Below are positions 164-30,607 of a stretch of 64,000 nt of DNA, piece after piece. A program made the position numbers and the translations under genes. Below the pieces are notes generated by a model that was given only the letters and a program-made list of their open reading frames with translations, ran no database searches and was not told the origin of the DNA. The stretch covers positions 1 to 64,000 of the forward strand of contig NW_003314448.1 in assembly GCF_000143415.4 (NCBI RefSeq), given 5' to 3'. Within the stretch, counting starts at the first letter, position 1; every line of letters starts with the position of its first letter. Origin of the DNA: Selaginella moellendorffii. Taxonomy: Eukaryota > Plantae > Lycopodiophyta.

Positions 164-596
164 CGGTTTGCAGGCACTTTGGGAGGCGCGGAACCACTGT
201 CGCTTTGATGGGCAACAAGCGAGAATATCGGCAGTGGTGGCATCATGGTGGAGACTCACTCTCGCAGCGGTGCGTCTTCACTACACCATCCTGAAAGAGC
301 GGGCGAAACCGAGGCAGCTCGAGGAGTGGAGATCTAGGTGGCTCCCATGCTTCGGCAAATTGGGAGGTGGCGAGATTCGCTGGCAATGGCGCCCCCCAGA
401 CTCTGTTCTAAGGTCAGCTCGTGGGGGAGACTTGGACATCGACATGATTCGCTCGAGACGACCACGTCCACTTCTACTCCAGGACTAGGTCTAGCTGCGG
501 CATATGAGGATCACGTAGAGTAGCTCATGGAGAGGGCGGCACGCCCATTTTTTGTATTAGTCCCATTGGGACATGGGGAATGTACATACACGTTCA
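164..596 (+). mobile_element. 5'-truncated L1/Tx1-like LINE 3' end (ORF2 C-terminus and 3' UTR), capped by telomeric repeats
   Basis: ORF 168-488 has LWEARNHCRF (LWxxRNxxxF-type L1 C-terminal motif) and WQWRPP. It resembles the end of ORF 44087-44836 (LWMIYRERI...WNWKPP). Confidence 0.6.
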
Positions 597-668
597 GCGA
601 TCTCGCCGGATTGCAACACCACGGGGTGTCTTTGACCCTAAACGCCTAAACGCGCCTAAATCCTAAAC
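597..668 (+). repeat. PLE 3'-terminal module (hairpin plus variant telomeric tail), copy 1
   Basis: GCGATCTCGCCGGATTGCAACACCACGGGGTGTCTTTGACCCTAAACGCCTAAACGCGCCTAAA. It recurs at 10768, 23120, 23327 (partial) and 30569. Confidence 0.9.
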
Positions 669-1879
669 TCTCTGCGGTTCAAAAGCATCCGAGCGGGCCT
701 CACCAGCTTTGCTCGGCTGCAAAAGCACATCCCACGCACCAAGTAAGCTTAAGTTCTCACACTGTTTTTATTGTTCCAGAAGAATCCAGTAAATTCAAAC
801 AACAATTTACCGGAATCGGACCTCTTCGCCAATGACAGGCCAAGACAGCTCCATATACGGCTCTAGGACAGGAGAAGCCAGCCACGATGCCCCTCACTCC
901 CTGCGCACAGGTCTGGCACAGCAAATCTCCAGGCCGGGCATTTACGTTGGCCCCTGTGCGCTGCACCTCACCGCCAGGACGCCACAGAAATCCCTGCCTG
1001 GAGCTGCTAACCGCCACTAAGAGTCTGGGAGCTAGCTCGGCATCTCCACCAACAGCTTCTCTGGCGTCTAGCGCAGCCCAGCTCCTCTGACTCACGTCCG
1101 GCACAGCAAGTGCCCCACAAAGGGTTTTTGCCCCCTTTGGTCGCTGCCTCGGCACCACCAAGGGATCTCCAAAAATCCTAAGGGGACTGCTCCCTGCTGT
1201 TGAGAGCATGCGCGCTGCCCAGACATCACCACAGAGCTGCTGAGATCCACCAGAATCCGCCGTAAAAACGCTGCCCGCTCACGCTGCTGTTTTCTCCCCT
1301 TTCTCCCCTCTCGCCCATCCTCCACCGTCAGATCCCCGTGATCTAACGGCCCACAACGCTCAAACACCAAGCGCAAAAAATTCTAAGTCCCAGCACTTAG
1401 ATTTTTTGTCTCTTGCTTTTTGTCCCTTGTGGCTGTGGAGGAGGGAGCAACGGGAGAAAGCACGAGAAAGCACGTGAGCGCAGCAGCTGTTTCTGAGCTT
1501 GCCAGTCTACGGCTCAAGGTCTGCCCTGCCCTCTCCTCCTCTCTGGAGGCAGGGCCTTTTTCGTTTTTCTTGCTTGGGGCTAACAGCAGAAAAAATCGGC
1601 CCTGCCAGCAGCAGCAGCCGGCGACCCAGCCAGCGCCAGCCACAGCCGCTGCCAACGCCAGCAGCTACAGCTGCCGCCAACGCCAGCAGCTGCCGCGGCT
1701 GCCACATCTCGGCCAGCCGCCCGCGGCGGCCACACCCAACGCTTGGGCGAGCACTCGCCGCCCAACGCGCCGCGGCTTGGCCGGCCCAGCAGCGCCAAGC
1801 AGCACCACGGGCTGCTACGCACTGCTGCACGCCGCCCAGGGCCGCTCCACGCGCGCCGCGCACCACCCAGCGACGCGCG

Positions 1880-2000: not shown

Positions 2001-2076
2001 GCCGCCCAGCGCCGCGCAGCGTCTCTAGCACCGTGGCTGTCCCCAGCACTACGGCTGCCACCAGTGACGCCCAGTG

Positions 2077-4866: not shown

Positions 4867-6710
4867 CCAGTCCGTCTAAGGCCACCCTCGACATCGCAGG
4901 ACAACGGCCAGTCTCGAAGTTCGAGAACCGAGTGGAGACTGGAGCCGTACACAACCTCTCGAGCAGGACTCTCTCAGCTGCCGAGATCCGTCTCCTCTCC
5001 CTCGGCCTGAGGTACATCCCGAACCCGGCACCGCTCAGAGCCCCACAGATCATGGAAAGCTCTGATGCTCTCTGCCGAGCCGTCCGACTCCGTCACCTCT
5101 TCAAGGACGACGACTCAGCCCTGCCGGAGTTCCGAGTACCGAACCCGATCTTCGAGCCGCCTCCAGCACCAGCGCATGTGGAACGACGCCTAGCACACTT
5201 GCGAGGCAGCCTGCTCCACAGGCTTGAAGGAGCACACAAGCCTCGCTCCTTCGCTCACGGTTGGAAGAAGCGTGCCCTCTGCTCTCTCGCGACGGACACC
5301 TCCATCGTCATCAAGCCCGCGGATAAAAACCTTGGAGCGGTGATTCTGGATCGCGATTGGTACACGAAGGAGGCTCTGCGCCAACTGAACGACCCACTCG
5401 TTTATGTGAAGGTCCCCTCCGTGCCATCCAAGGCCCTCCAGGAACGCCTCGCCGAGCTCATCACAAAGTACCGCAGCTGCTCATGGCTCGACAACTCCAC
5501 GCAGCAGTTCCTGCTGCACCAGCCCGCCGTACCCCGGCAAGCTTGCATGCTGTATTTTCTTCCGAAAATACACAAGCAGCCAATAAAGGGCCGGCCAATT
5601 GCGAGCTATATCGGCACTTTGTGGGAGCCCCTCGCGCGGTGGCTTCACCGCCAGCTCTACGACATCCTGCTGAAGCAGCCAACGTTTCTCGCTGATTCGC
5701 TCACGCTGCTACAGGACCTCCTCCACCTACAGCTCCCGCGGGACTGCTGGCTCTTCACGTTCGACGTAGAGAGCCTCTACCCAAGCATCCCCACACGAGA
5801 GGGTCTCCAACGCCTCCGCGACTTTGTGTTTGCCGAGTACGGCAACACCACACGCTCGCGATTCCTCATGGCTGCGGCTGCCCTCGTCCTGGAGCACAAC
5901 TACGTGGAGTTTGACGGTAACATCTACCAGCAGATCCGCGGCACAGCGATGGGCTCCAACTTTGCGGTGGTCTACGCTTGTCTCTTCCTCTGCTCTCTTG
6001 AAGCCGAGTACAAGCACGCCACCAACGACTGGCCCTTCTATCTACGAAGGTACATAGATGACGGAGTGGGCATTTGGACAGGTACACGAGCAGGCCTCGA
6101 ACGATGGCTCCGAGGATACGGCACGCTGTGTCCTTCGATCAAGATCACCTCGGTGATCTCGCTCGAAGAGTTGGATATCCTCGATATCCACTTCTTCAAA
6201 GGCCCTCGCTTTGAAGAGACAGGCTGCCTCGACTCGTCCACGTTCCAGAAGCCCCTCAATGCCTACCAGTACCTCCCCTGGACGTCGGTTCACCCACGGC
6301 ACCAGAAGGTGGCATTCATCCGCAGCGAGCTCCGCAGATACCTCCTCCGCGAGAGCACGGCCGATGGATTCCACACCATGCGCACGCGGTTCTACCACCA
6401 CCTCCGTGCCCGGGGATACCCGACCTCCTTCCTCCATCACTGCTTCTCCGGCATCTCCTACGACCAGCGACATCAAGCTCTCCTTGCACGTTCGCGCCGC
6501 TCTAGCGACGCCTGTCGACGGGCCCCCCTCGCCTTCAAGCTGCCTTACACACTCCACAGCGCGCAGCTAGGCTTGGGGGACATCCTAAACCCTAAACAGG
6601 TGATGGATGAAGCTCCCGCAGACACACTCCCCCGAGTGATTACGTGTTGGAGACGCTCCCCGAACCTCGGTTCGTTCCTGGTCAGGGCCAAGCTCCCTCC
6701 GCGAGCTTAG
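4449..6710 (+). CDS. PLE reverse transcriptase in the -1 frame (no endonuclease); predicted ORF1-RT fusion of ~1544 aa
   Basis: KPADKN, LPKIHK, FDVESLYPSI, GTAMGSNFA and RYIDDG motifs. The frame is stop-free from 4449 (translated by hand). No GIY-YIG domain before the stop. Confidence 0.93.
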   Translation, partial: RTAAERDYWDSSHLFRCIGFFFEGDSAPDISSPAWFPRKECWTRWPSPLRPQQLPAATPTLHDTGTGHLRSPATARTFTDQRQQGSSHTQPSTSPWTEPDPCQPQEQDPSTTTPLTLALTLTNRQSPCEGNPQDYWSPLTSPSKATLDIAGQRPVSKFENRVETGAVHNLSSRTLSAAEIRLLSLGLRYIPNPAPLRAPQIMESSDALCRAVRLRHLFKDDDSALPEFRVPNPIFEPPPAPAHVERRLAHLRGSLLHRLEGAHKPRSFAHGWKKRALCSLATDTSIVIKPADKNLGAVILDRDWYTKEALRQLNDPLVYVKVPSVPSKALQERLAELITKYRSCSWLDNSTQQFLLHQPAVPRQACMLYFLPKIHKQPIKGRPIASYIGTLWEPLARWLHRQLYDILLKQPTFLADSLTLLQDLLHLQLPRDCWLFTFDVESLYPSIPTREGLQRLRDFVFAEYGNTTRSRFLMAAAALVLEHNYVEFDGNIYQQIRGTAMGSNFAVVYACLFLCSLEAEYKHATNDWPFYLRRYIDDGVGIWTGTRAGLERWLRGYGTLCPSIKITSVISLEELDILDIHFFKGPRFEETGCLDSSTFQKPLNAYQYLPWTSVHPRHQKVAFIRSELRRYLLRESTADGFHTMRTRFYHHLRARGYPTSFLHHCFSGISYDQRHQALLARSRRSSDACRRAPLAFKLPYTLHSAQLGLGDILNPKQVMDEAPADTLPRVITCWRRSPNLGSFLVRAKLPPRA

Positions 6711-8888
6711 CCACGTCTTGTACCACACTTTGCAAGACACGGAAGCATATGTTTGCATCCCTCTCCGCATACCCTATGACTCCCAGGGTCTGGCCGATGG
6801 ACTTCAGGTATGTCCCAAGTCACTCCAGGCCACCCCCCTTTCGAGTCAACGCCAGGTCAACGCGGAGTCAACGGTCAGAACGGAATATTCCCCAATATTC
6901 CGACTGTATCCCTGTTGACCGAGTCAAAACGGCATATACCGTTGGATTCCGCTCTTCCTTCCGATCGTGAATATGTGAGTTTCAACTCTGAACTCCACAC
7001 ATGACTCGTGGAAAAGCGTGTATTCCGTTAAAACGGTGCCGCTCCCTCGACATCGGCGACACACGCCGACAGCTCGCGGGATGGCTCTCCCCGACACAAC
7101 CGCTGGACTCCGAGTATGTATGAGTGACCTCAGGCCCTCCACCACCACAGTCCACACACGGTCAACGCGGGGTCAACGGTCAACGACGGAATATTCCGAG
7201 AATATTCCCTGCAAAGTGAACCACGTTTTTTCGTCGCCGGGTACGTACAAGTGATACAAGCATTGTGGACGTAATGCATGCATCATATCATGCCGCGTTC
7301 ACAAGTTATCTCGCGTCAAAGGTACATCACCCGCCGGACGAACGCTTACTGTCTTCGGCGATCCGCCGAAGTCATTCTCCGCGACTACCACTGCTGTGGA
7401 GTAACCAACACCAGCTGTGCTACGTTCGCACCCTTGCGAGCCAACGCTGCCACGCCACTTCGCATGGCCGCCACACGGACTCGCGCCACGTGACAGAGCC
7501 AAAATATAAGTAGAGTCGGCACCGAGCTAGGGTTAAGGTAGACACTAGATGACTACACTCGACTCGTCCACGTTCCAGAAGCCCCTCAATGCCTACCAGT
7601 ACCTCCCCTGGACGTCGGTTCACCCACGGCACCAGAAGGTGGCATTCATCCGCAGCGAGCTCCGGAGATACCTCCTCCGCGAGAGCACGGCCGATGGATT
7701 CCACACCATGCGCACGCGGTTCTACCACCACCTCCGTGCCCGGGGATACCCGCCCTCCTTCCTCCATCACTGCTTCTCCGGCATCTCCTACGACCAGCGA
7801 CATCAAGCTCTCCTTGCACGTTCGCGCCGCTCTAGCGACGCCTGTCGACGGGCCCCCCTCGCCTTCAAGCTGCCTTACACACTCCACAGCGCGCAGCTAG
7901 GCTTGGGGGACATCCTAAACCCTAAACAGGTGATGGATGAAGCTCCCGCAGACACACTCCCCCGAGTGATTACGTGTTGGAGACGCTCCCCGAACCTCGG
8001 TTCGTTCCTGGTCAGGGCCAAGCTCCCTCCGCGAGCTTAGCCACGTCTTGTACCACACTTTGCAAGACACGGAAGCATATGTTTGCATCCCTCTCCGCAT
8101 ACCCTATGACTCCCAGGGTCTGGCCGATGGACTTCAGGTATGTCCCAAGTCACTCCAGGCCACCCCCCTTTCGAGTCAACGCCAGGTCAACGCGGAGTCA
8201 ACGGTCAGAACGGAATATTCCCCAATATTCCGACTGTATCCCTGTTGACCGAGTCAAAACGGCATATACCGTTGGATTCCGCTCTTCCTTCCGATCGTGA
8301 ATATGTGAGTTTCAACTCTGAACTCCACACATGACTCGTGGAAAAGCGTGTATTCCGTTAAAACGGTGCCGCTCCCTCGACATCGGCGACACACGCCGAC
8401 AGCTCGCGGGATGGCTCTCCCCGACACAACCGCTGGACTCCGAGTATGTATGAGTGACCTCAGGCCCTCCACCACCACAGTCCACACACGGTCAACGCGG
8501 GGTCAACGGTCAACGACGGAATATTCCGAGAATATTCCCTGCAAAGTGAACCACGTTTTTTCGTCGCCGGGTACGTACAAGTGATACAAGCATTGTGGAC
8601 GTAATGCATGCATCATATCATGCCGCGTTCACAAGTTATCTCGCGTCAAAGGTACATCACCCGCCGGACGAACGCTTACTGTCTTCGGCGATCCGCCGAA
8701 GTCATTCTCCGCGACTACCACTGCTGTGGAGTAACCAACACCAGCTGTGCTACGTTCGCACCCTTGCGAGCCAACGCTGCCACGCCACTTCGCATGGCCG
8801 CCACACGGACTCGCGCCACGTGACAGAGCCAAAATATAAGTAGAGTCGGCACCGAGCTAGGGTTAAGGTAGACACTAGATGACTACAC
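6228..8888 (+). repeat. 1330-bp tandem duplication (pseudo-LTR): 6228-7558 and 7558-8888
   Basis: Near-identical copies of the RT C-terminus plus 3' UTR at a constant offset of 1330, with a 1-nt junction overlap. Confidence 0.95.
8815..8840 (+). promoter_or_regulatory. Putative Pol II promoter in the PLE 3' UTR (G-box GCCACGTG plus TATAAG)
   Basis: Motifs lie ~50-75 nt upstream of the hammerhead. Also present at ~7485-7510 and ~21220-21245. Confidence 0.45.
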
Positions 8889-8929
8889 CCGGCTGATGAG
8901 TCCCAAAAAGGACGAAACCGGTCTCGGGT
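8887..8929 (+). ncRNA. Minimal type I hammerhead ribozyme
   Basis: Stem I ACCCGG/TCGGGT, CTGATGA core, stem II GTCC-CAAAAA-GGAC, GAAA, palindromic stem III ACCGGT, GTC cleavage triplet at 8921-8923. Confidence 0.92.
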
Positions 8930-9074
8930 TGTCTCTTGTCCTCTCCCTCGCTCACGAATGAATGAAAATTCATTCCTTTGCCTCCTCTACTTGCTCTCAA
9001 TCATGCCGTTTCGACAACGGCACACGGAGAATGTGGATTGCACAAAGTGGTGCCGCGATCTCGCCGGATTGCAA

Positions 9075-10767
9075 GGATTGCCCTAAGTTGTTTGAGGAGA
9101 GAGCTCGAAGGCGCTAGAGAGAGAGTGTGAGAAAGAGGGAGGGAGCGAGCGTCCAGGGCGGCACAAGCATCGCAGACCGCGGCAGCAACACACGGAGCTC
9201 GTCTCCCTCCTCTTTCTCCTCTTTTCTCTCGCTCTCTGTCGTTTTTATCGATATCTCCCAAACGGCTGGGAGAAACCTCGATTCCTTCGACGGGGGGCTT
9301 CTAGGAGTGTAGATTCTCATCCTCCTAGAAGGCCGCGGCGAGATCTGCCACGGATCTGGAGATCTCGCTGGCCCTAGGTCGCTGCTGTTTCTAGGGTTCT
9401 TCGGCGGCGGCTAGGGTTTTTCGGGGCTTAGAGATTTGGAGGAGTGGAGAGGGCAGCTAGGAACACCACGGCTGCAGCAGCTGGACGCTCTCCTCTCCTC
9501 CTCTTCTTTTTTCGCTTCTCATGGTTTCAAGTTTTTTGGGAGCTCATAACTCCTAAACGGCTTGGAATGTTTCCACAAAAATTCACAGGGGGATAGCTGG
9601 GAGGGAGCCTCACACCCTCCCAGAAGCGCAGGCAAAAATTCTTCACGGTCTCAGAGTTCTCACCTGCCCTAATTCGTGGCTAGGGTTAGGGTTCTTGGCT
9701 AGCTTTTGCCCTAACTGCGGTTAGGGCAGGACTTAGGGTGGCGGCGGGATCTTCGATCCGGCCACTCTAAGTGTCAGGGATCTTCGTTGCATGTGGTTGG
9801 CACGGCAGCAACATGGTGGAAACGCGACGGTTGCTGGTCTCGCAGCTTCGAGCGGGATTTCTCGCCTTAGGTCGGGCCATGCAAGGTGGTGACTAAGGTA
9901 CGGAGAGCGTGAAGCTGCATGTGTCGGAGGTTCTTGGCGACTTGAGTCGTGGAAACACGACCAAGTCATGGGAATTTTGTTGACTGGTGGAGGACAGTTT
10001 GGGACGACATCCCGACATAGCGAAGTGTCCGCAGTGGATGGACGTGGAGGACACTATGGGCGCATTTTTGGATCTAGTGACAGGGGAGTGCTGTCACAAA
10101 GGGGGCCAGTGGCAGATGGCCGAGTTGGTTTGCTCGCGGAGGGGATCCCACATGGTTCTTGCTTCAGGGCTAGTCCTTTGAGGAGGTTCGCGGAGGCTTG
10201 CAAGTCTTGTGATTGTCGCGATGCCGGCAACGGGGGCTCGTATATCATTGAAGGGGGCCAGCGCACTTGTCTAGTGTGGGAGGCAAGGTAGCACGCTCTA
10301 GTCTAGAGCTCGAGGAGGCTCACACCTCGCTTGTTCTACGCCTTGGAGTTTGTTCGCAATGGGCACCGACTTAGTGCTGGAAGTACACTGGGGAGGTAGG
10401 CGCTCCAAGACACAGCATCACGTCTTGGGGCGTAACAGGTGGCTTCAGCTTGTGCAGTGGAGTCACCTTGGAGGCGAGTGACCCATGAGCGACGCCGGGT
10501 CATCGTGCTCGAGTTGGACCGCTTGGCTGCGACGACGTCGAGCTAGATCGACATGGTGTTCGTCTGGCCTGACATCATTGTGACCGAGTGGAGGAGTGGC
10601 AAGGCGAAGCAGGTGGCTTCAAGCTCCGCGGTGGAGTCACCTGGGAGGCGGACGGCCCAAGAGCAGCGCCGGGCGTTCGTGCTCATAGTTTCACTAGTTT
10701 CTTCGAGAGTGCGCTCTCAATGTTGTTTTGATCCCTTTGGGATTGGGGTAATGTACATATATGTTTA
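9075..10767 (+). mobile_element. 1.7-kb non-coding insert in the PLE terminal hairpin, copy 1
   Basis: Flanked by GCGATCTCGCCGGATTGCAA at 9055-9074 and 10768-10787. Its last ~45 nt resemble the LINE 3' UTR at ~551-596. Confidence 0.7.
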
Positions 10768-10806
10768 GCGATCTCGCCGGATTGCAACACCACGGGGTGT
10801 CTTTGA

Positions 10807-10902
10807 CCCTAAACGCCTAAACGCGCCTAAACCCTAAACCCTAAACCCTAAACGCCTAAACGCGCCTAAACCCTAAACCCTAAACCCTAAACCCTAAACC
10901 CT
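10807..10902. repeat. Interstitial telomeric tract with embedded CGCCTAAACGCGCCTAAA variants
   Basis: Read directly from the sequence. Confidence 0.95.
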
Positions 10903-12438
10903 GCCCAGTACCGCCTGGTACCGCCCAGTGCCGCCCAGCAGCTCCAGGCCGGGCATTTACGTTGGCCCCCCTGTGCTGCACCTCACCGCCAGGACGCCAC
11001 AGAAATCCCTGCCTGGAGCCACTAAGAGTCTCGAAGCTAGCTCTGCATCTCCACACAGCAGCTTTTCTGGCGTCTGGTGCGGCCCAGCTCCCCTGACTCA
11101 GGTCCGGCATAGCAAATGCCCCACAAAGGCTTTTTGGTCCCCCCTTGGCGGCTGCTTCGGCACCACCAAGGGATTTCCAAAAATGCTAGGGGGATTGCTC
11201 CCTGCTGTTGAGAGCGCCTGTGCCACCCAGACATCACCACAAAGCTGCTGTGATCTCTGGCATGATGCCCCTCACTCCCCTCGCACAGGTTTGGCACAGC
11301 ATGTCTCCAGGCCGGGCATTTGCACTGGCCTCTGCGCGCTGTGTTCCGCCGCCAGAGCGCCACAAATAATCCCCACCTGGAGCTGCTTACGGCCACTAAG
11401 AGTTTGGGAGCTAGCTTGATATCTCCACTCAGCAGTCTTTCCGACGTCTAGCGCAGCCCAGCCCCCCTGACTTGGGTCTGGTACAGCAAATCCCTCACAA
11501 CGGCTTTTTGTCCCCCTCTGGTATGTTGCCTTGGCACCACCAAAGGATCACCAAAGATGCCAATGGGAATGCTCCCTGCCACTCCGAGCACCCAAGCTGC
11601 CTAGACATCGCCACAACACTGCCAAAAATCGACCTAATCTGCCATGGAAGCACAAAACCAACTTTGCATGCCAGCACTGGCCCTGCTACTGCAGAGCCAG
11701 ACACTATGCCGATGGCACGGGCTCTCTCACCACCTCTGGTGCCAGATCCCTTGCAATCGCCACCCAGGCCAGCCCTTGCCACTGGAACAGAGCAGCGAGC
11801 CCTCTCGCCTTAATGCTCTCCAGGACCTGGCCCAGCGCAGCAGCCACTGTCACCTTTGCACTTGGCTCTGCTCTGCGTGTCCATGACACCACACTCAACA
11901 CTCTCGACGAGTGCCTCGACACAACCAACAAATTGCCCTTCTATCGACAGAGGTACACAGATGACGGAGGGACAGGTACACGAGCAGGCCTCGAACGATG
12001 GCTCCGAGGATATGGCACGCTACGTCCCTCGATCAAGATCACCTCGGTGATCTCGCTCGAGGAGTTGGATATCCTTGATATCCACTTCTTCAAAGGCCCT
12101 CGCTTTGAAGAGACACGCTGCCTCGACTCGTCCACGTTCCAGAAGCCGCTCAATGCCTACCAGTACCTCCCCTGGACGTCAGTTCACCCATGGCACCAGA
12201 AAGTGGCATTTATCCACAGCGAACTCCGGAGATACCTCCTCCGCGAGAGCACGGCCGATGGATTCCATGCCATGCGCATGCGGTTCTACCACCGCCTCTG
12301 TGCCCAGGGATACCTGATCTCCTTCCTCCAACACTGCCTCTCCAGCATCTCCTCTGACCAGTGACATCAAGCTCTCCTTGCACGCTTGCGCCGCTCTAGT
12401 GACGCTTGTCGACGGGCCCCCCTCGCCTTTAAGCTGCC

Positions 12439-13585
12439 TGTAAGCCACAATTTTTCCTTTCCAATTTGCCAGCTTACCTCGTCTATCCGTCCAACACTGC
12501 CTTGGCTTTTGCTAAGTTCCCTTGCCAAGGTTCTCGCCTATGGTACCAGCCCCTACTTGGTTTCAGCTACTCACTGCACGAGCAACGGAGTGTTAGCCAT
12601 CCTTCCACGGATTCCCAAATCACTCCCAATCCCCCTCCCCGGGTTAGACTGGACTTAAGGTTCGGCTACACTCCCCGCAAGCACAAGCAGCCAAGCACAC
12701 CAAGCTTCCAGGTTCCTAACATCCCTTGGTACCACAAGACTTGATCATGGGACCCTCTAAATCCCAAGTCTTGAGTGCAACACTTGCTTCGGGACGCCGG
12801 GGCGAAACACCGTGGCCTAACGGCCCGGTATGGGTACCTCTCGCTCCCCACTTCCATCCCGAAGGAAGGCCCAAGCCCCTTGGAAGGGCGAGGACCAATG
12901 AGCCGCATGGTACTCAAGTGGGGCACCACTCCACATGAGCCGGGAGCACCGCAATCGGTTTCCCTTTCGGGAGTGGGAGCTGCTCTTGAGCACTTCCTTG
13001 GATGGCCCCTCCGGCACCAGCCAAGTCCATGCTCACTCCCACCCAAGGCCCCTTAGTCCCAGTCCCAACCTCAAGTCGGTTTGGAAGCCCAACTGGAGAG
13101 TCCCTTCAAAACTGGTTCCTGGACCTCACTATCCCTACTATACTTTTGGAACCCCCTGCAGCCCCCCCCCCCTGGGGGACGCACGCTTTGGGCTTTCACC
13201 CCTTGACCCGTATTAGTATTTGGACTTAGTCTCTGGCTCGATCTCGGATCCGATTTCGGATCCGACTTCGGATTCGGTCTCGGACTCGATCGCGGACTCG
13301 ATCTCGGACCCGATCTCGGGCCCGACCTCGGACTCGACTTCGGACTCGGTCTCGGACCCGATTTCGGATCTCGGACTCCGTCTCGAACTCGGTCTCGAAC
13401 TCGGACTCGAACTCGGTCCCCGAGTCGGTCTCGGACTCGATTCCGGACTCGATCTCGAACTCGGTCCTAGAGTCGGTCTTGGACTCGATCTTTGACTTGG
13501 TCCCATCCGATGAACTCTTTGTCATTTTGGTCATGCTTTCGGGGTTCCCTTAGCCTACGACACCTCGGCGAGTTGGTTCCTTACA
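12439..13585 (-). repeat. 3' LTR of the Gypsy element, containing a TCTCGG/ACTCGG microsatellite-like block
   Basis: Copy of 18822-19968 at offset 6383. Confidence 0.95.
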
Positions 13586-13989
13586 ACTCCACCACCCATA
13601 GAAGAAGTTCGATGCCCACATCGAACGTCTCTTTTTTATCCTACGACTTGTTGACCATGTCTCCGGGGGCATCCCCCCACTTAGCGGTGTGCCTAAGTTA
13701 GCCTCCCCGGCCAAGAGCTCATGACAACGGAATATAGGTGTCCCTATACTCCACCCCTCACCACGCCCTAGTATGGGGTCGGGACTTGAACCCAGCCTTG
13801 CTTTACTAGGGGGTTGGGACTCGAACCCAACCTCCGTAGAATACGTCTACGGTTTCGACATCCCCGCAGGGAGTCGGGCGTAGCTCCCTACGCCTGGTCG
13901 ACCTAGCTAACCCATGCTAATTAGCTCACCTTTGGCGCGCCTTCGGGTCCCAACATATGCCACTTGCTCAACTTTGCAAATTGATATTT

Positions 13990-16900
13990 TTAATTGAACT
14001 TTGCATAAGTACATAGAGTTCTGCCTTGCAGAAATTCCTCCACTAGATCTCGCGCGTTCGCTAGGTTCTCCTCCGGTTCCCATGTTGCTTCGCAGTGTGG
14101 AAATCCTTTCCACTTCACATGGAACTCTCTCACCTCGCGTCCTTGTCGCTTGCTCTTGCGCGCATTGAGGATGGCCTCGACTTCGTATTCCTCTTCCCCT
14201 TGGATAACCTCAGGTAAAGGTCTTACTTGGTCTTTGCGAAGCGGATCCTCAAAGTACGGCTTGAGTAAGTTCACATGGAACACTGGGTGCATCTTCCCCA
14301 TCTCTCGAGGAAGTCGGAGTCGGTAAGCCACTTTACCGATTCGTGCCTCAATCTCGTAAGGCCCCGCGAACCTGCTCAAGGAACTCAAGATCAATTCATT
14401 TACAGGAATACATGCATTTTTACCTTTGGGTCAACTTTCGGCTGATCCCACTTGGTAGCCTAAGGTTCTTGGTGTTCAGCCACACCTTCTCCCCAGCTTG
14501 GAACTCTACGTCCCGGCGCTTTAGGTTCGCGTACTTGGTTTGCCTTTGTTGAGCCCGTTCCAAGGAATCCCTCACTAGATTCCAAATGTTGAGTCTTTCC
14601 GCCGTGAATGCCTCCACTGCGGGTAACTCTCCATGATACTCGGCCACGCCAAGTTCCACAGGACCTTCAATAGCTCGCCCATTGATGACTTCCCATGGAC
14701 TCACCCCGATACTCGAATGTGGTGAGTTGTTATAACACATTTCCGCAAGTCCCAAATGACTTACCCAATCGGTCTGGTCTCCCGAGACATAGCATCGCAA
14801 ATAATCCTCCAGCTGCCTATTCACCCTTTCCGTTTGTCCGTCTGTCAAGAAGTGTTAGGACCACCAAACTTGACTTAATACCCCATACCTGTCTGTGGGT
14901 GATAGGCTGTGCTGAATTTCAACTTGGTGCGATACTGTTCCAGGAGGGTCCTCCAGAACCTACTAGTGAAGATCTTATCTCGGTCTGAGATAATCTCCTC
15001 TGGCCTTCCCCGCACTCGAACCACTTGTTCGAAGAACAGTTTCGCCACACCTTCCGCATCCACCTCCGTTGTGGTGGGTATGAAATGTGCCATCTTCGAA
15101 AATCGGTCCACCACCACGAATATCGCATCGAACCCCTCGCTTGGGGGTAGTCCCGTGATGAAGTCCATCGTGAGACATTTCCACGGACGATCTGGAATGG
15201 GGATGCTTTGCAACAAGCCCCCACTAGCCTTAGTCACGGCTTTGACCTGCTGACATGTTGGACATGTCTTTACATAGTCTTGGACGTCCTTAGCCATATC
15301 TGGCCAATGGTACTTCCTCTTGAGTAAGCCCATCGTCTTGGGCACTCCGCCGTGTCCCGCAAGAGGTCCGTCATGACACTCTTCTAAGGCTACCTTCCTT
15401 AGTCCACCTTCTGGAACATACACCCTCGTTTGCTTGTAATAAATGAGTCCATTGCGTTCCGCATAGCCCGTTTTCTCTTCCGTTGGCGGCTCACCTCTCT
15501 GGTGAGCTTCCCGTGCCTCCAGATTCCTCAACAACACTTCTTGTGCTAGACCATCGTTCTCATATGCTGTCCGCACATCGTCCCAGAAGGTTGCTGTTGC
15601 GCTGGAGATCGCCAACCTCAAGCTCGCTTTTCGACTTAGCGCATCTGCCACGATGTTGCTCTTCCCAGGCTTGTACAGGATCTCGCAATCAAACTCGGCC
15701 AAGGCATTGGCCCACCGACCTTGTTTCCCTCTCAGGTCGGGTTGTGACAAGAAGTGTTTCGTTGCCACATTGTCCGTGTAAACCTTGAAGTGTCTCCCAA
15801 GGTAGTGTCGCCACTCCTTGAGCGCCTTGACCACCGCAAACAATTCCTTCTCGTGGGCAGGCCACTTCCGTTGAGCCTTGTCCAGCTTCTTCGAGAAGAA
15901 CGCTACTGGATGGTTGTCTTGCTTCAAAACTGCGCCTAACGCAAAGTCCGAAGCATCCGTGTCTACCTCAAAGTCCTTACCAAAGTCCGGTAATGCCAAC
16001 ACCGGAGCCTTCCTCAACTTCCCTTTGAGGTGGACGAATGCCGCCTCGCATTCCGCTGTCCATACCATCTTCCCTTTTCCCGTTTGATCCGTTAAGGGTA
16101 GGGCTACTCTCGAATAGTGTCTGATAAACTTTCGATAGTAGTTGCATAGCCCCAAGAACGCCCTCAACTCATGTACATTCGATGGTCGCTCCCATTCCTG
16201 GATCGCTTGGACCTTCTCCGGGTCCACCTTGAGCCCATCCTGGCCCACCACATGCCCGAGAAACTTTACCTCTTGCTGAGCAAAGTCACATTTGCTCTCT
16301 TTAGCATACAGTTTATGTTCCCTTAGTTTCTCAAACACCTTCGCCAAGTGTTCGGCATGCTCCTCTAGCGTCTCGCTATAGATCAGGATGTCGTCAATAT
16401 AGACGACCACAAAGTGATCCAGATAGGGTACAAAGACGTGGTTCATCAACGCCGAAAACGTTGCCGGCGCATTGCACAGCCCAAAGGGCATCACCAAAAA
16501 CTCAAAGCTCCCATACCTCGTTCGACAGGTTGTCTTCTCGACATCTTCCTCGGCTACCCTGATCTGGTAGTATCCTGACCTTAGGTCAATCCTCGAGAAG
16601 TATTTTGCCTTTCCCAACCTATCGAACAGGTCCTCAATCCTTGGCAACGGGTACTTGTTCTTCTTGGTATACTTGTTGAGCAACCGGTAATCTATGCACA
16701 TGCGCATAGATCCATCTTTCTTTTTCACAAATAATACCGGCGCCCCATACGGCGACTTGCTCAACCTAACATACCCTTTGCCCACCAACTCCTCTAGTTG
16801 GCACTTGAGCTCCTTGAGTTCTTTTTCGTTCAAACGATAGGGGGGACGAACCACCGCCTCAGCGCCCTCGACAAGCTCAATCTTATGTTCTATCGGTCGT

Positions 16901-18762
16901 GCGGGGGGCAACCCCGCCGGTAGCTCCTCCGGCATGGTATCCTGGAATTGGTCCAACACTCGCTGGATCACTAAAGGCACTTCTTCCGTTCTTGTCTTTT
17001 TGTCACTCTTCACCGAGAGTAAGCACAAAAAGGCTGCCTTAGTTCCTTTAGTGAGTTGTCCTCTCGTGGACACCAGGTTCAAGCATGACTCTTTGGCCTT
17101 GCTTTGCCCTACCTTTAGATCCTGGGCCTCCACCCTAGATCTTCTTCCTTGGGCATTCGCCAATACCACAAGGTTCCTACCTTGTCCATGCAGGGCTACC
17201 ACGAACCGATTAAACCAATCCATTCCGAAGATCACGTCAAATCCCGCCATATCCAAGACGGTGAAATCCATGTCCACTTTCCATGTCCCCACTTCGACTC
17301 TCGCTTGTCGAAGTACCTCATCGGTGCTTTGGCTACCCTGAACAAACTCTATAGTCCTTGGTTCGCCTAGCCGCTGCACCGTTAGTCCGGCTTGCCGGAC
17401 TATGTCTGCAGCCACAAAATTATCCGAAGCACCCGTGTCAATAAGGATCTTAACAAAGCTACCTCCGAGCTTCCCTCGGAGGGCTAGTAGATGTCGCGAA
17501 CGACTCTCTACCAAAGTTGCTCGTGTAATGAGTAACTTTGAGTTAGGGACTGGATCACATACCTCAGTTTGGACTTCACCCGACTTGATGGCCATATTGG
17601 CTCTGGCCTTCTTCGGGTAGGGACATTCCCTCGAGAAGTGTCCCGCTTCGCCGCAGTTGTAGCATACGTTGTTTCCCACGCTGCTATACGACTTGACCTT
17701 CTTATCCGTGGGTTTGTCCTTTTTCGCTTGACTCCCCCACGTACTCGCTCGCTGGCCACCGGATTTGCCTTTCCGGAACCCCGAGGACTCATTCTTAGAG
17801 AAACTCCTTTTGAATTTCCCCTTGCTATACGTTCCCCTTGGTTTGGCCCCTTTGCTAAATGTGGATCCCGACCCCGTCGTGTTCCCCTTTCGCAGGTTAT
17901 CGTTGAAATGCACCTTGATGGCCGCATCCAACGCTTCCTTGTAGTTGGTCGGGTTCCACCTCATCACCTCGCCGCGAGCCCAGGTTTGCAAACCTGATAT
18001 GAAGGCATGGAACGCATCCATATCCCCCATGTCCGTGACAAGTATCCTCTTTGCCATGAACCCATTCACATATTCCTGGATGGTTCCTGTCTGTTTCAGC
18101 CTACTCAGTTCATCCCTCAGATGCAGAGTGGCATTCGGAGGGACATATGTTGCGCGGATCCTCGCCTTCATCATGTCCCAAGTGACCACCGGTCCTTCGT
18201 TGGCCTCCGTTGTTCTCCACCAAGACTTGGCATTATCTGCCAAGTATGGTTTTGCACATGGGACCTTCTCCGAGCTTGGTAACCGCAACGCTCGGAAGTA
18301 GTCCTCCATATCGTAAAACCAATCCTCCACCACCTTATAGTCATTCACTCCCTTGAAGACCGGTGGGGGCTTTGGTTTGTACTTGGGAACTGCCTGAGGG
18401 ACTGATTCCACTTCGGTCTGTTCGACCTTGTCTGGTTTTGCCTCAGTCCCGGCCGAAAGATCCGCACCTTCTGCGCTGCCAGCATCCGCAGTCTTTTTCT
18501 TTTTCTTCCGCCTCTCGTCACGCTTTAGCTTGCGTACGAGAGTTTCCAGCAGGGCATTGGTCTGTGCCAACTGTCCTTCTAGCACGTCCAATCGAGCCTT
18601 GGACGACCGAACCTCGCCACCGGACTCCTGTTTGGAGGTTTCCTCACTGGAGTCCTCCTCATGCAAGGATTCCTCATCCATAGCCTCTTGTTCGACCGGA
18701 GGCTCCAGCTCTGGCGGAGGTTCCGTCTCCGCTTGGGTTTGCTTACGCCCTGCCCTTGCCAT
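13990..18762 (-). CDS. Gag-Pol (Gag, CCHC, protease, RT, RNase H, integrase, chromodomain); join(18762-14889,14841-14424,14371-13990), 1557 aa
   Basis: [33 protein letters not shown] and SDRD motifs. Splicing restores HPQTDGQTER and QRFAGPY. Chromodomain EYEVEAIL...VKWKG...TWEP. Confidence 0.9.
14372..14423 (-). other. 52-nt GT-AG intron in the integrase C-terminal region
   Basis: AG|GTAAAA...TTGAGCAG|G. Removal joins KLTQR to FAGPY in frame. Confidence 0.85.
14842..14888 (-). other. 47-nt GT-AG intron in the integrase catalytic core
   Basis: AG|GTATGG...CTAAC...TGACAG|AC. Removal restores HPQT-D-GQTER. Confidence 0.9.
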
Positions 18763-18821
18763 CTCCCAGCAATCCGCCTCTATCCTTCGCTAGAACTGAG
18801 GAAAAGGCTCCGATACCAAAT

Positions 18822-21334: not shown

Positions 21335-21478
21335 TGTCTTTTGTCCTCTCCCTCGCTCACGAATGAATGAAAATTCATTCCCTTGCCTCCTCTACTTGCT
21401 CTCGATCATGCCGTCTCGACAACGGCACACGGAGAATGTGGATTGCACAAAGTGGTGCCGCAATCTCGCCGGATTGCA

Positions 21479-23119
21479 GCAAAAGCCCTAAGTTGTTTGA
21501 GGAGAGAGCTCGAAGGCGCTAGAGAGAGAGTGTGAGAAAGAGGGAGGGAGCGAGCGTCCAGGGCGGCACAAGCATCGCAGACCGCGGCAGCAACACATGG
21601 AGCTCGTCTCCCTCCTCTTTCTCCTCTTTTCTCTCGCTCTCTGTCGTTTTTATCGATATCTCCCAAACGGCTGGGAGAAACCTCGATTCCTTCGACAGGG
21701 GGCTTCTAGGAGTGTAGATTCTCATCCTCCTAGAAGGCCGCGGCGAGATCTGCCACGGATCTGGAGATCTCGCTGGCCCTAGGTCGCTGCTGTTTTTAGG
21801 GTTCTTCGGCGGCGGCTAGGGTTTTTCGGGGCTTAGAGATTTGGAGGAGTGGAGAGGACAGCTAGGAACACCACGGCTGCAGCAGCTGGACGCTCTCCTC
21901 TCCTCCTCTTCTTTTTTCGCTTCTCATGGTTTCAAGGTTTTTGGGAGCTCATAACTCCTGAACGGCTTGGAATTTTTCCACAAAAATTCACAGGGGGATA
22001 GCTGGGAGGGAGCCTCACACCCTCCCAGAAGCGCAGGCAAAAATTCTTCACGGTCTCAGAGTTCTCACCTGCCCTAATTCGTGGCTAGGGTTAGGGTTCT
22101 TGGCTGGCTTTTGCCCTAACTACGGTTAGGGCAGGACTTAGGGTGGCAGTGGGATCTCCGATCTGGCCACTCTAAGTGTCAGGGATCTTCGTTGCATGTG
22201 GTTGGCACGGCAGCAACATGGTGGAAACGCGACGGTTGCTGGTCTCGCAGCTTCGAGTGGGATTTCTCGCCTTAGGTCGGGCCATGCAAGGTGGTGACTG
22301 AGGTACGGAGAGCGTGAAGCTGCATGTGTCGGAAGTTCTTGGCGACTTGAGTCGTGGAAACACGACCAAGTCATGGGAACTTTGTTGACTGGTGGAGAAC
22401 AGTTCGGGACGACATCCCGACATAGCGAAGTGTCCGCGGTGGATGGACGTGGAAGACACTATGGGCGCATTTTTGGATCTAGTGACAGGGAAGTGCTGTC
22501 ACAAAGGGGGCCAGTGGCGGATGGCCGAGTTGGTTTGCTCGCGGAGGGGATCCCACATGGTTCTTGCTTCAGGGCTAGTCCTTTGAGGAGGTTCGCGGAG
22601 GCTTGCAAGTCTTGTGATTGTCGCGATGCCGGCAACGGGGGCTCGTATATCATTGAAGGGGGCCAGCGCACTTGTCTAGTGTGGGAGGCAAGGTAGCACG
22701 CTCTAGTCTAGAGCTGGAGGAGGCTCACACCTCGCTTGTTCTACGCCTTGGAGTTTGTTCGCAATGGGCACCGACTTAGTGCTGGAAGTACACTGGGGAG
22801 CTTGTGCAGTGGAGTCACCTTGGAGGCGAGTGACCCATGAGCAACGCCGGGTCATCGTGCTCAAGTTGGACCGCTTGGCTGCGACGACGTCGAGCTAGAT
22901 CGACATGGTGTTTGTCTGGCTTGTCATCATTGTGACCGAGTGGAGGAGTGGCAAGGCGAAGCAGGTGGCTTCAAGCTCCGCGGTGGAGTCACCTGGGAGG
23001 TGGACGGCCCAAGAGCAGCGCCGGGCGTTCGCGCTCATAGTTTCACTAGTTTCTTCGAGAGTGCGCTCTCAATGTTGTTTTGATCCCTTTGGGATTGGGG
23101 TAATGTACATATATGTTTA
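21479..23119 (+). mobile_element. 1.65-kb non-coding insert, copy 2
   Basis: Flanked by GCAATCTCGCCGGATTGCA at 21460-21478 and 23120-23138. Confidence 0.7.
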
Positions 23120-23158
23120 GCAATCTCGCCGGATTGCAACACCACGGGGTGTCTTTGA

Positions 23159-23410
23159 CCCTAAACGCCTAAACGCGCCTAAACTCTAAACCTAAACCCT
23201 AAACCCTAAACCCTAAACGCGCCTAAACCCTAAACCCTAAACCCTAAACCTAAACCCTAAACCCTAAACCCGTAAACCCTAACCCCTAAACCCTAAACCC
23301 TAAACCTAAACCCTAAACCCTAAAACCGCCGGATTGCAGCACCGCGGGGTGTCTTTGACCCTAAACGCCTAAACGCGCCTAAATCCTAAACCCTAAACCC
23401 TAAACCCTAA
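23159..23410. repeat. Interstitial telomeric tract with a ~57-nt truncated terminal module at 23327-23383
   Basis: CCCTAAA arrays on both sides of CGCCGGATTGCAGCACCGCGGGGTGTCTTTGACCCTAAACGCC... Confidence 0.95.
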
Positions 23411-28780: not shown

Positions 28781-28928
28781 TCACACCACTAAGCTTGTTT
28801 ATTTCCTGACCACTAAATGAAAATTCACTCCCTCGCCTCCTCTACTTGCTCTCGATCACGCCGTTTCGACAACGGCACACGGAGAATGTGGATTGCACAA
28901 AGTGGTGCCGCGATCTCGCCGGATTGCA

Positions 28929-30568
28929 AAAAAGCCCTAAGTTGTTTGAGGAGAGAGCTCGAAGGCGCTAGAGAGAGAGTGTGAGAAAGAGGGAGGGAGC
29001 GAGCGTCCAGGGCGGCACAAGCATCGCAGACCGCGGCAGCAACACACGGAGCTCGTCTCCCTCCTCTTTCTCCTCTTTTCTCTCGCTCTCTGTCGTTTTT
29101 ATCGATATCTCCCAAACGGCTGGGAGAAACCTCGATTCCTTCGACGGGGGGCTTCTAGGAGTGTAGATTCTCATCCTCCTAGAAGGCCGCGGCGAGATCT
29201 GCCACGGATCTGGAGATCTCGCTGGCCCTAGGTCGCTGCTGTTTTTAGGGTTCTTCGGCGGCGGCTAGGGTTTTTCGGGGCTTAGAGATTTGGAGGAGTG
29301 GAGAGGACAGCTAGGAACACCACGGCTGCAGCAGCTGGACGCTCTCCTCTCCTCCTCTTCTTTTTTCGCTTCTCATGGTTTCAAGTTTTTTGGGAGCTCA
29401 TAACTCCTGAACGGCTTGGAATTTTTCCACAAAAATTCACAGGGGGATAGCTGGGAGGGAGCCTCACACCCTCCCAGAAGCGCAGGCAAAAATTCTTCAC
29501 GGTCTCAGAGTTCTCACCTGCCCTAATTCGTGGCTAGGGTTAGGGTTCTTGGCTGGCTTTTGCCCTAACTACGGTTAGGGCAGGACTTAGGGTGGCAGTG
29601 GGATCTCCGATCTGGCCACTCTAAGTGTCAGGGATCTTCGTTGCATGTGGTTGGCACGGCAGCAACATGGTGGAAACGCGACGGTTGCTGGTCTCGCAGC
29701 TTCGAGTGGGATTTCTCGCCTTAGGTCGGGCCATGCAAGGTGGTGACTGAGGTACGGAGAGCGTGAAGCTGCATGTGTCGGAAGTTCTTGGCGACTTGAG
29801 TCGTGGAAACACGACCAAGTCATGGGAACTTTGTTGACTGGTGGAGAACAGTTCGGGACGACATCCCGACATAGCGAAGTGTCCGCGGTGGATGGACGTG
29901 GAAGACACTATGGGCGCATTTTTGGATCTAGTGACAGGGAAGTGCTGTCACAAAGGGGGCCAGTGGCGGATGGCCGAGTTGGTTTGCTCGCGGAGGGGAT
30001 CCCACATGGTTCTTGCTTCAGGGCTAGTCCTTTGAGGAGGTTCGCGGAGGCTTGCAAGTCTTGTGATTGTCGCGATGCCGGCAACGGGGGCTCGTATATC
30101 ATTGAAGGGGGCCAGCGCACTTGTCTAGTGTGGGAGGCAAGGTAGCACGCTCTAGTCTAGAGCTGGAGGAGGCTCACACCTCGCTTGTTCTACGCCTTGG
30201 AGTTTGTTCGCAATGGGCACCGACTTAGTGCTGGAAGTACACTGGGGAGCTTGTGCAGTGGAGTCACCTTGGAGGCGAGTGACCCATGAGCAACGCCGGG
30301 TCATCGTGCTCAAGTTGGACCGCTTGGCTGCGACGACGTCGAGCTAGATCGACATGGTGTTCGTCTGGCTTGTCATCATTGTGACCGAGTGGAGGAGTGG
30401 CAAGGCGAAGCAGGTGGCTTCAAGCTCCGCGGTGGAGTCACCTGGGAGGTGGACGGCCCAAGAGCAGCGCCGGGCGTTCGCGCTCATAGTTTCACTAGTT
30501 TCTTCGAGAGTGCGCTCTCAATGTTGTTTTGATCCCTTTGGGATTGGGGTAATGTACATATATGTTTA
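28929..30568 (+). mobile_element. 1.65-kb non-coding insert, copy 3
   Basis: Flanked by GCGATCTCGCCGGATTGCA at 28910-28928 and 30569-30587. Near-identical to copy 2. Confidence 0.7.
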
Positions 30569-30607
30569 GCGATCTCGCCGGATTGCAGCACCGCGGGGTG
30601 TCTTTGA

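What the first reader, a model, noticed from the sequence alone, without database searches (positions are those of the whole stretch)
9047..10793. 1.7-kb insert sits in the PLE terminal hairpin with a 19-20 bp target duplication: candidate site-specific parasite of the telomeric element
Seen: the segment is flanked by GC(G/A)ATCTCGCCGGATTGCA in all three copies. Deleting it and one repeat rebuilds the hairpin GTGGTG-CC-GCGATCT-CGCC-GGATTGC-AA-CACCAC, and the variant GTGGTGC/GCACCGC also pairs. The 5' junctions differ between copies (aggatt, gcaaaa, aaaaa before GCCCTAAG). Both flanks of copy 2 share the A variant. The insert has no credible ORF, many hairpins and no poly(A). Inference: a non-autonomous, target-specific retroelement that inserts immediately upstream of the telomere-annealing tail, so it is carried to chromosome ends.
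Basis: partly seen in the sequence, partly recalled or inferred. Interest (0 to 1): 0.85.

Follow-up and report, generated by a model that had tools for sequence, protein, structure and literature searches.

The report
Site-specific parasite of telomeric Penelope element
In the spikemoss Selaginella moellendorffii, a 1.7-kb non-coding jumping element lands again and again at one exact spot inside the end hairpin of the Penelope-like retroelements that sit at chromosome ends; none of the papers I searched describes this nested parasitism.

Summary
The window is the left end of S. moellendorffii scaffold GL377752.1, a chain of endonuclease-less Penelope-like elements (PLEs) and telomere tracts. 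In three PLE 3' ends a 1,635-1,688-bp non-coding segment splits the terminal hairpin. Each copy is flanked by a 19-bp direct duplication of the inner stem-loop, with 5-6 unrelated filler bases at the 5' junction.

The refutation test failed:
- Uninterrupted ("empty") hairpins exist in the same genome, three in scaffold GL377664.1, two of them on PLE 3' UTRs 96.5% identical to the filled one.
- Empty hairpins also appear in contigs of three public runs.

Inserts 2 and 3 differ at 4 of 1,635 bases, but their flanks differ at 9 of 181 (p = 4e-7). They therefore entered different targets.

A second body with a related 3' end stops at the same nucleotide. One run shows insert-19mer-insert tandems.

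Best reading: a non-autonomous, site-specific retroelement inserted by target-primed reverse transcription, probably using a sibling LINE's enzymes. Read-through RNAs borrow the PLE tail to reach chromosome ends. I could not verify here that the sibling is a LINE.

Other agents of this scan found the same system on other pieces of this genome. Five literature searches found no published description.

The parts
8887..8929 (+). Hammerhead ribozyme of PLE copy A, 125 nt upstream of the target hairpin
   Evidence: Rfam Hammerhead_1, 40.5 bits against a gathering score of 34, E = 4e-7
9047..9054 (+). Left outer arm of the PLE terminal hairpin (GTGGTG plus CC)
   Evidence: Sequence; pairs with 10788-10793 in the rebuilt hairpin
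9055..9073 (+). Upstream copy of the 19-bp target duplication (the inner stem-loop), G variant
9074..9079 (+). 5' junction filler AGGATT, which partly repeats the preceding GGATT
   Evidence: a contig of run X1 lacks these 6 bases (table 4)
9080..10767 (+). Insert copy 1, 1,688 bp and non-coding. It starts GCCCTAAG and ends ATGTACATATATGTTTA.
10768..10786 (+). Downstream copy of the 19-bp duplication, G variant
10787..10836 (+). Right outer arm (ACACCAC) and the telomere-complementary PLE tail, followed by telomere repeats to about 10905
21460..21478 (+). Copy 2 upstream 19-mer, A variant. The filler GCAAAA follows at 21479-21484.
21485..23119 (+). Insert copy 2, 1,635 bp, in PLE copy B (family A type)
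23120..23138 (+). Copy 2 downstream 19-mer, A variant, followed by the tail
28910..28928 (+). Copy 3 upstream 19-mer, G variant. The filler AAAAA follows at 28929-28933.
28934..30568 (+). Insert copy 3, 1,635 bp, 99.76% identical to copy 2. It lies in a chimeric PLE of family C.
30569..30587 (+). Copy 3 downstream 19-mer, followed by the tail variant with arm GCACCGC
165..596 (+). 5'-truncated sibling element. Earlier scan notes call it an L1/Tx1-type LINE. An ORF is open from the truncation point to the stop at 486-488, and the last ~70 nt resemble the insert's 3' end. It is joined at its 5' side to the terminal telomere tract.
597..672 (+). 19-mer plus right arm plus tail after the sibling element. 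The junction nucleotide is the same as for the insert.
23328..23385 (+). Tail-only mini-copy that starts inside the 19-mer, within a telomere tract. It shows telomere-primed, 5'-truncated copying of the tail.

Best explanation
The 1.7-kb segment is a discrete, non-autonomous, non-coding retroelement. It integrates sequence-specifically into the 3' terminal hairpin of the endonuclease-less telomeric Penelope-like elements of Selaginella moellendorffii.

Shown:
- It has fixed ends.
- It sits at one nucleotide position, always in the PLE's sense orientation.
- It duplicates exactly the 19-bp inner stem-loop of the hairpin.
- It carries 0-6 extra bases at the 5' junction.
- It has entered different target copies, while uninterrupted targets persist.

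Inferred mechanism:
- Integration is by target-primed reverse transcription. The bottom strand is nicked just 5' of the 19-mer and the top strand just 3' of it.
- The enzymes come from a sibling autonomous element, reported elsewhere in this scan as an L1/Tx1-type LINE. That sibling ends in a related 3' stem-loop and stops at the same nucleotide.
- The element has no poly(A). Its RNA probably reads through into the downstream 19-mer and tail, and that stretch can anneal to the nicked target.
- The same read-through gives the RNA the PLE's telomere-complementary tail. Insert- or LINE-containing RNAs can therefore also be copied onto chromosome ends by telomere-primed reverse transcription.
- The duplication leaves an inner stem-loop on both sides of the insert. 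The tail-proximal half of the docking signal may therefore survive.
For: - Empty sites. Contigs join 9054 to 10768 with 19 shared bases in runs X13 and X20, and contig 3 of X1 runs from 9074 into CACCACGGGG. In scaffold GL377664.1 (L002), two PLE 3' UTRs 96.4-96.6% identical to window 8095-9073 carry an uninterrupted hairpin and tail. A third, 5'-truncated unit does too.
- Independent insertion. Inserts 2 and 3 differ at 4 of 1,635 positions and their flanks at 9 of 181 (Fisher p = 4e-7). Their hosts are PLE family A and a family C chimera, which are 69% identical in the RT region.
- Junctions. There are three different 5' fillers, plus a fourth junction with no filler in run X1.
- Target variants. 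The G and A variants of the 19-mer both occur in empty sites, and each insert's two flanks match.
- Tandem. Run X1 holds the insert's 3' end, then the 19-mer, then the insert's 5' end. This is what re-insertion into a duplicated target would give (loose ends and record 5).
- Sibling. A different body (window 165-596; L002 8727-8961) ends at the same nucleotide. Its last ~70 nt are 70% identical to the insert's, with a small hairpin kept by a G-C to A-U change on both sides. Its two copies differ at 1 of 235 bases, but their tails differ at 5 of 58 (p = 0.0013). The tail therefore belongs to the target, not to the element.
- Element ends. Relatives of the insert's 5' end and 3' end occur next to unrelated sequence exactly at these boundaries (loose ends in X13 and X20).
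- Other classes excluded. There is no terminal inverted repeat, no ORF with a family match and no RNA-gene head.
Against: - The 106-aa ORF remnant at 168-488 matches no Pfam family, no protein in two large protein searches and nothing convincing in the ESM Atlas. Its LINE identity and any endonuclease rest on unchecked notes from other windows.
- The flanks of filled copies 1 and 2 group together against the two empty copies at 20 of 52 variable sites. Those two could descend from one insertion, so only copies 2 and 3 give hard evidence of independence.
- No 5'-truncated insert copy was seen.
- Two contigs suggest that relatives also sit outside the hairpin, so specificity may not be absolute.
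- Logan contigs cannot show transcription, and no RNA ends were observed.
Confidence: 0.75

Rival explanations
1. Tail-carrying element added at chromosome ends. On this view the insert natively owns the 19-mer and tail as a captured 3' cassette. The PLE reverse transcriptase copies it onto chromosome ends, and the upstream PLE plus 19-mer is a later end addition or template switch, not a target duplication.
For: 5'-truncated sibling-plus-tail units and tail-only units lie inside telomere tracts, so RNAs carrying the tail are copied from the tail inward. The fillers partly repeat template bases (GGATT, GCA), as in template jumps.
Against: - The upstream PLE would have to end at exactly the same internal nucleotide, inside its own hairpin and without its tail, in at least four separate junctions.
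- The insert-19mer-insert tandem lacks any tail between the units.
- Tails diverge about 20 times more than the bodies they follow.
- A relative of the insert's 3' end is followed by unrelated sequence at the same boundary.
Confidence: 0.1
2. Endonuclease-independent insertion. On this view the palindromic 19-mer extrudes as a cruciform and host nucleases nick it at its base. The PLE reverse transcriptase, not a LINE, then primes on read-through RNAs.
For: The duplication equals the inner stem-loop almost exactly, so the two nicks lie at the base of the palindrome. The PLE RT ORF shows only a reverse-transcriptase match and no GIY-YIG domain, and nothing in this window encodes an endonuclease for the insert.
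Against: The insert shares its 3' terminal stem-loop with a sibling that has a coding remnant, as in the usual LINE/non-autonomous partner relation. Earlier scan reports describe that sibling as an L1/Tx1-type LINE that lands repeatedly at this nucleotide.
Confidence: 0.08
3. One ancient insertion later spread among PLE tails by gene conversion or segmental duplication, with no continuing mobility.
For: Subtelomeres recombine often. The flanks of copies 1 and 2 are each other's closest relatives among four UTRs. Copy 3 sits in a chimeric element.
Against: Conversion tracts would have to stop exactly at the insert's ends while leaving flanks 5% diverged. The junction fillers differ. A second element occupies the same site, and tandem copies are separated by only the 19-mer.
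Confidence: 0.04
4. The segment is an integral part of the PLE 3' UTR, and the empty forms are deletions between its 19-bp repeats.
For: All three A-type 3' ends in this window are filled.
Against: - Empty forms rebuild a coherent two-stem hairpin and are at least as deep as filled forms in the runs.
- Both A-type 3' UTRs in L002 are empty.
- The fillers differ, and insert and flank ages disagree.
Confidence: 0.03

Closest known systems
Tx1L LINE, which inserts specifically into the Tx1D DNA transposon of Xenopus, and other Tx1-clade sequence-specific L1-type LINEs (my own knowledge; the clade is discussed in PMC4640811 and PMC4494074)
   Same: A retroelement whose specific target lies inside another mobile element. 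The position and orientation are exact, the target duplication is constant, and non-autonomous partners share the LINE's 3' end.
   Different: Here the target is the functional 3' RNA hairpin of a telomeric, endonuclease-less Penelope-like element in a plant. The inserted unit is a 1.7-kb non-coding partner, and the LINE itself was not verified here.
R1/R2 in 28S rDNA and TRAS1/SART1 in silkworm telomere repeats (R1Bm: PMC1919474; SART1: PMC7265360)
   Same: Site-specific target-primed reverse transcription and tandem stacking at one site. Target-derived sequence at the RNA 3' end is used for precise priming, and a safe multicopy niche is exploited.
   Different: Those targets are host genes or the telomere repeat itself. 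Here the target is another retroelement's docking signal, and the duplication is 19 bp covering a palindromic stem-loop.
Athena, Coprina and Terminon endonuclease-less PLEs at telomeres, including those of S. moellendorffii (Gladyshev and Arkhipova 2007, as cited in PMC8557442, PMC4209133 and PMC12477314)
   Same: This describes the host element: an RT without GIY-YIG, a hammerhead ribozyme, a reverse-complement telomere tail, and chains alternating with telomere tracts.
   Different: The insert is not part of that element. The papers I could read do not mention a parasite of its 3' hairpin. The 2007 paper itself is not in the library, so I could not check it.
HeT-A, TART and TAHRE of Drosophila telomeres (my own knowledge)
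   Same: Coding and non-coding retroelements share a route to chromosome ends and form head-to-tail arrays.
   Different: The Drosophila elements attach to ends themselves and replace telomerase. Here telomerase repeats are present, and the insert reaches ends only by sitting in front of another element's tail.

Membership tests
Sequence-specific non-LTR retrotransposon system (non-autonomous member) | Independent insertions at the same nucleotide in the same orientation | tested here: met
   There are three window copies plus a run contig, with four different 5' junctions at one position. Copies 2 and 3 sit in diverged flanks (p = 4e-7).
Sequence-specific non-LTR retrotransposon system (non-autonomous member) | Target-site duplication of constant length, and uninterrupted targets elsewhere | tested here: met
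   The duplication is 19 bp in 3 of 3 copies. Empty sites occur in L002 three times and in three runs.
Sequence-specific non-LTR retrotransposon system (non-autonomous member) | 3' end shared with an autonomous LINE that encodes reverse transcriptase and endonuclease | tested here: inconclusive
   The 3' similarity and the identical junction with the sibling at 165-596 are shown. The sibling's coding remnant matches no family or protein. No full-length copy could be fetched.
Sequence-specific non-LTR retrotransposon system (non-autonomous member) | 5' junction irregularities (extra bases, 5' truncation) | tested here: met
   There are 0-6 extra bases at the 5' junction. No insert copy is 5'-truncated. 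The sibling is truncated at two different points.
SINE (RNA polymerase III head derived from tRNA, 5S or 7SL) | Small-RNA-derived head with an internal promoter | tested here: not met
   The Rfam E-value scan of 1-33000 finds no such family in the insert, only a chance-level MIR156 hit on its long hairpin. At 1.7 kb it is also too long for a typical SINE.
Integral 3' UTR of the Penelope-like element | Always present in copies of the same PLE family | tested here: not met
   Two 96.5%-identical UTRs in L002 lack it.
DNA transposon | Terminal inverted repeats and a short duplication | tested here: not met
   The best terminal inverted match is 6 bases, no better than shuffles.
Endonuclease-less telomeric PLE (the host element) | PLE-type RT without GIY-YIG, a hammerhead ribozyme, and a telomere-complementary tail abutting telomere repeats | tested here: met
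   The RT ORF gives an RVT_1 match only. Relatives carry DUF8422 and HTH_animal, and GIY-YIG appears only in a distant hit. The hammerhead is, and the tail and repeats.

The most novel reading that the evidence does not exclude
A three-tier retroelement community may operate at plant chromosome ends. A non-coding element uses the enzymes of a site-specific LINE. That LINE targets the docking hairpin of a telomerase-related, endonuclease-less Penelope element. Both parasites leave the tail-proximal stem-loop intact, so their read-through RNAs are themselves copied onto chromosome ends and become building blocks of the telomere-adjacent chain, a HeT-A/TART-like arrangement layered on top of telomerase.
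Probability: 0.35. Interest if true: 0.8.

Novelty: new variant of a known kind. Interest (0 to 1): 0.62.

Why it matters
Site-specific retroelements are known mainly from animals. Their usual targets are rRNA genes, small-RNA genes, telomere repeats or a DNA transposon.

Here the target is the RNA-level docking hairpin of a telomere-attaching Penelope-like element in a land plant. The parasite therefore gains a safe landing site and also a route to chromosome ends.

The finding offers a natural dissection of which part of the PLE 3' signal is needed for telomere priming. It also offers a compact 19-bp palindromic target for studying how a LINE endonuclease reads sequence or structure. Finally, it gives a plant example of layered retroelement parasitism at telomeres.

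Tried and rejected
- Recovering the full-length sibling LINE failed.
  - The 106-aa remnant (168-488) gave only two spurious repetitive hits in the 1.84-billion representative library.
  - It gave nothing in the word-indexed protein search, nothing in Pfam even at E = 10, and only a 0.80 feature score in the ESM Atlas.
  - Exact look-ups of insert and sibling ORFs found no called gene.
  - A protein from the PLE 3' region found only the window's own gene, so no further PLE 3' ends could be surveyed.
- The LINE fragment at L002 12870-14211 is unrelated to the sibling.
- I considered splicing for the 1,713-base skip and rejected it. The ends are GC..TA, 19 bases are shared across the joint, and the same uninterrupted form stands in assembled genomic DNA.
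- I considered a DNA transposon, a Helitron and a SINE, and rejected them.
- Copies 1 and 2 cannot be shown independent from their flanks alone.
- The Gladyshev and Arkhipova 2007 paper is not held.

Full report
**Where we are.** The window begins with 165 bases of CCCTAAA repeats. An exact protein look-up places it at the start of scaffold GL377752.1 of assembly GCA_000143415.2. Cluster mates of the window's own RT protein are named Selaginella moellendorffii.

The first 31 kb is a chain of Penelope-like elements (PLEs), all in one orientation and separated by telomere tracts.
- Copy A has ORF1 at 2074-4866 and the RT ORF at 4932-6710.
- Copy B is broken by a Gypsy element whose LTRs are identical (12439-13585 and 18822-19968).
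- Copy C has ORF1 at 23886-26594 and the RT ORF at 26591-28438. It is only 69% identical to copy A in the RT region.

The RT ORFs give only a weak RVT_1 match and no GIY-YIG domain. Their relatives are plant and algal proteins with the PLE-type domain set. Hammerhead ribozymes lie at 8887-8929 and 21279-21348. Endonuclease-less, telomere-attached PLEs with hammerheads are already published for this species (Gladyshev and Arkhipova 2007, as cited in PMC8557442, PMC4209133 and PMC12477314). The host element is therefore known. The question is the 1.7-kb segment inside its 3' end.

**The observation.** It is correct in every detail.
- The 19-mer occurs seven times against none expected. Six occurrences bracket three copies of one segment (9080-10767, 21485-23119, 28934-30568).
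- The segment always starts GCCCTAAG and ends ATGTACATATATGTTTA.
- Between the upstream 19-mer and the start lie AGGATT, GCAAAA or AAAAA.
- Copy 2 has the A variant on both sides; copies 1 and 3 have G on both sides.
- The rebuilt sequence folds into an outer stem of 6-7 bp and an inner stem of 7 bp with a CGCC loop. The 19-bp duplication is exactly that inner stem-loop plus one base.
- The insert has no ORF above 107 aa, no Pfam match in the ORFs of 61 aa or more, no poly(A), no terminal inverted repeats and no RNA-gene head.

**The decisive test: empty sites.** I laid contigs of four public runs on 8400-10835.
- Runs X13 and X20 each hold a contig that joins 9054 to 10768 with 19 shared bases, that is, hammerhead region, uninterrupted hairpin and tail.
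- In run X1 a contig runs from 8699 to 9074 and on into CACCACGGGG, which is the same empty form.
- Independently, cluster mates of the family C RT led to scaffold GL377664.1 (L002). There, two PLE 3' UTRs 96.4-96.6% identical to window 8095-9073 over 979 bases end in the uninterrupted hairpin and tail (L002 838-1860 and 7626-8650). A third, 5'-truncated unit (9048-9130) does the same.
- These empty sites carry both the G and the A variant of the 19-mer. The matched A/A flanks of copy 2 are what a true target duplication would give.

The 'integral 3' UTR' alternative is therefore rejected.

**Independent insertion.** Inserts 2 and 3 differ at 4 of 1,635 aligned bases and share a 53-bp deletion relative to copy 1. 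Their immediate flanks (113 bases upstream, 68 downstream) differ at 9 of 181 (Fisher p = 4e-7).

Their hosts also differ. Copy 2 sits in an A-type element. Copy 3 sits in a chimera in which a family C element is joined, after window position 28807, to 113 bases of A-type UTR, the insert and the tail. Native family C elements (L002, L003) instead continue for about 700 bases through their own hammerhead to a different tail.

A caution applies to copies 1 and 2. Their flanks group together against the two empty UTRs at 20 of 52 variable sites. Their independence therefore rests only on the different fillers and the concordant G/G versus A/A flanks.

**More signs of a mobile unit.**
- Run X1 holds a contig reading the insert's 3' end, the 19-mer, then the insert's 5' end with no filler. 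This is a head-to-tail tandem separated only by the duplicated target, as expected if a second copy enters one of the duplicated sites.
- Run X13 holds a 94.5%-identical relative of the insert's first ~300 bases. It starts at the same GCCCTAAG but is preceded by unrelated sequence.
- Run X20 holds a relative of the insert's last bases, followed at exactly position 10767 by unrelated sequence.

Both boundaries defined by the duplication are thus real element ends. Targeting may not be absolute.

**The sibling element.** Window 165-596 is a different body. An ORF is open from its 5' truncation point to a stop at 486-488. Its last ~70 bases are 70% identical to the insert's, and the stretch ATGTACATA-YRYGTTYA occurs only at these four 3' ends. 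Both ends fold a small hairpin in which G-C in one is A-U in the other.

It stops at the same nucleotide before the 19-mer. A second copy (L002 8727-8961), truncated at another point, differs at 1 of 235 bases while the tails behind the two copies differ at 5 of 58 (p = 0.0013). The tail again belongs to the target, not to the element.

Both sibling copies are joined at their 5' side directly to telomere repeats. Tail-only mini-copies also occur (window 23328-23385; L002 around 9207). So RNAs that end in the PLE tail are copied from the tail inward onto chromosome ends, often incompletely.

Earlier scan notes on other pieces call the sibling an L1/Tx1-type LINE that lands repeatedly at this nucleotide (s1-419112, s1-434246, s1-385016). 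I could not confirm its LINE nature. Every protein search with the 106-aa remnant was blank or spurious, and no full-length copy could be fetched.

**Mechanism.**
- Shown: a discrete non-coding unit, one insertion point, one orientation, a 19-bp duplication, variable 5' fillers, persistent empty targets, entry into diverged targets, tandem stacking, and a sibling with a related 3' end at the same point.
- Inferred:
  - Integration is by target-primed reverse transcription, with the two nicks at the base of the inner stem-loop, using the sibling's enzymes.
  - The RNA has no poly(A) and probably reads through into the downstream 19-mer and tail.
  - That read-through would let the nicked bottom strand anneal and start cDNA exactly at the element's end, as described for R1, R2, TRAS and SART (my own knowledge).
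  - It would also give the RNA the PLE's telomere-annealing tail.
  - The duplication leaves an inner stem-loop on each side, so the tail-proximal signal may remain usable.

**Rivals.**
- A tail-owning element added at chromosome ends fails to explain why the upstream PLE ends at one internal base in four junctions, and why tandems lack a tail between units.
- Nicking of a cruciform by host enzymes, with the PLE RT doing the copying, cannot be excluded. It does not explain the 3' end shared with the sibling.
- Spread by gene conversion does not fit the sharp age contrast at the insert's ends or the differing fillers.

**Novelty.** The kind is known: site-specific non-LTR elements with non-autonomous partners (Tx1L in Tx1D, R1/R2, TRAS/SART). 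The target is not: the docking hairpin of a telomeric Penelope-like element, in a plant, with hitch-hiking to chromosome ends. Five literature searches found no description of it. Other agents of this scan reached the same reading on other DNA of this genome, so this is the same system seen again, not a separate discovery.

Noticed in passing
window 28438-28933; L002 11706-12870; L003 about 10471-11620: PLE copy C is a chimera. It matches native family C up to 28807. It then switches to 113 bases of A-type UTR, the insert and the tail, and so loses family C's own hammerhead and its different tail (ending ...CACAATTCCAAAATCC before the telomere repeats).
   Followed up: partly
window 6228-8888: There is a 1,331-bp tandem duplication (99.85% identical) covering the end of the RT ORF and most of the 3' UTR of PLE copy A. 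Its second unit ends at the first bases of the hammerhead (8887-8888).
   Followed up: no
window 9091-9465 (run X13): A 94.5%-identical relative of the insert's 5' part has contig depth 750-1,200, against 20-35 for the rest of the insert. It has a different upstream flank. It is either a much more abundant related repeat or, if the run is RNA, a highly expressed one.
   Followed up: no
window 9080-9270 and 9660-9740: The insert's first 190 nt form a long purine/pyrimidine hairpin (-90.7 kcal/mol, z = -3.8). Rfam gives it a chance-level MIR156 hit. Six telomere-like hexamers occur in the insert against 0.87 expected, five of them clustered at 9667-9738 and partly pairing with each other.
   Followed up: partly
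window 12439-19968: A Gypsy-type LTR retrotransposon with 100% identical 1,147-bp LTRs and an intact 1,295-aa gag-pol ORF on the minus strand is inserted in PLE copy B. This is a very recent insertion.
   Followed up: no
L002 12870-14211: A different LINE, with the FADD motif of its RT, is 5'-truncated and joined directly to telomere repeats. It is unrelated to the sibling element. Other retroelements therefore also end up capped by telomere tracts here.
   Followed up: partly
window 640-672 and L002 1840-1870: The tail is joined to the 5' end of the next PLE through barely one telomere-like repeat. The junction is identical in two scaffolds, so this two-unit arrangement has been duplicated between chromosome ends.
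   Followed up: no
window 32190-32950: A tandem array with a short period of about 36 bases shows 75-90% identity between units. Two overlapping ORFs of about 300 aa over it are probably artefacts of the repeat.
   Followed up: no
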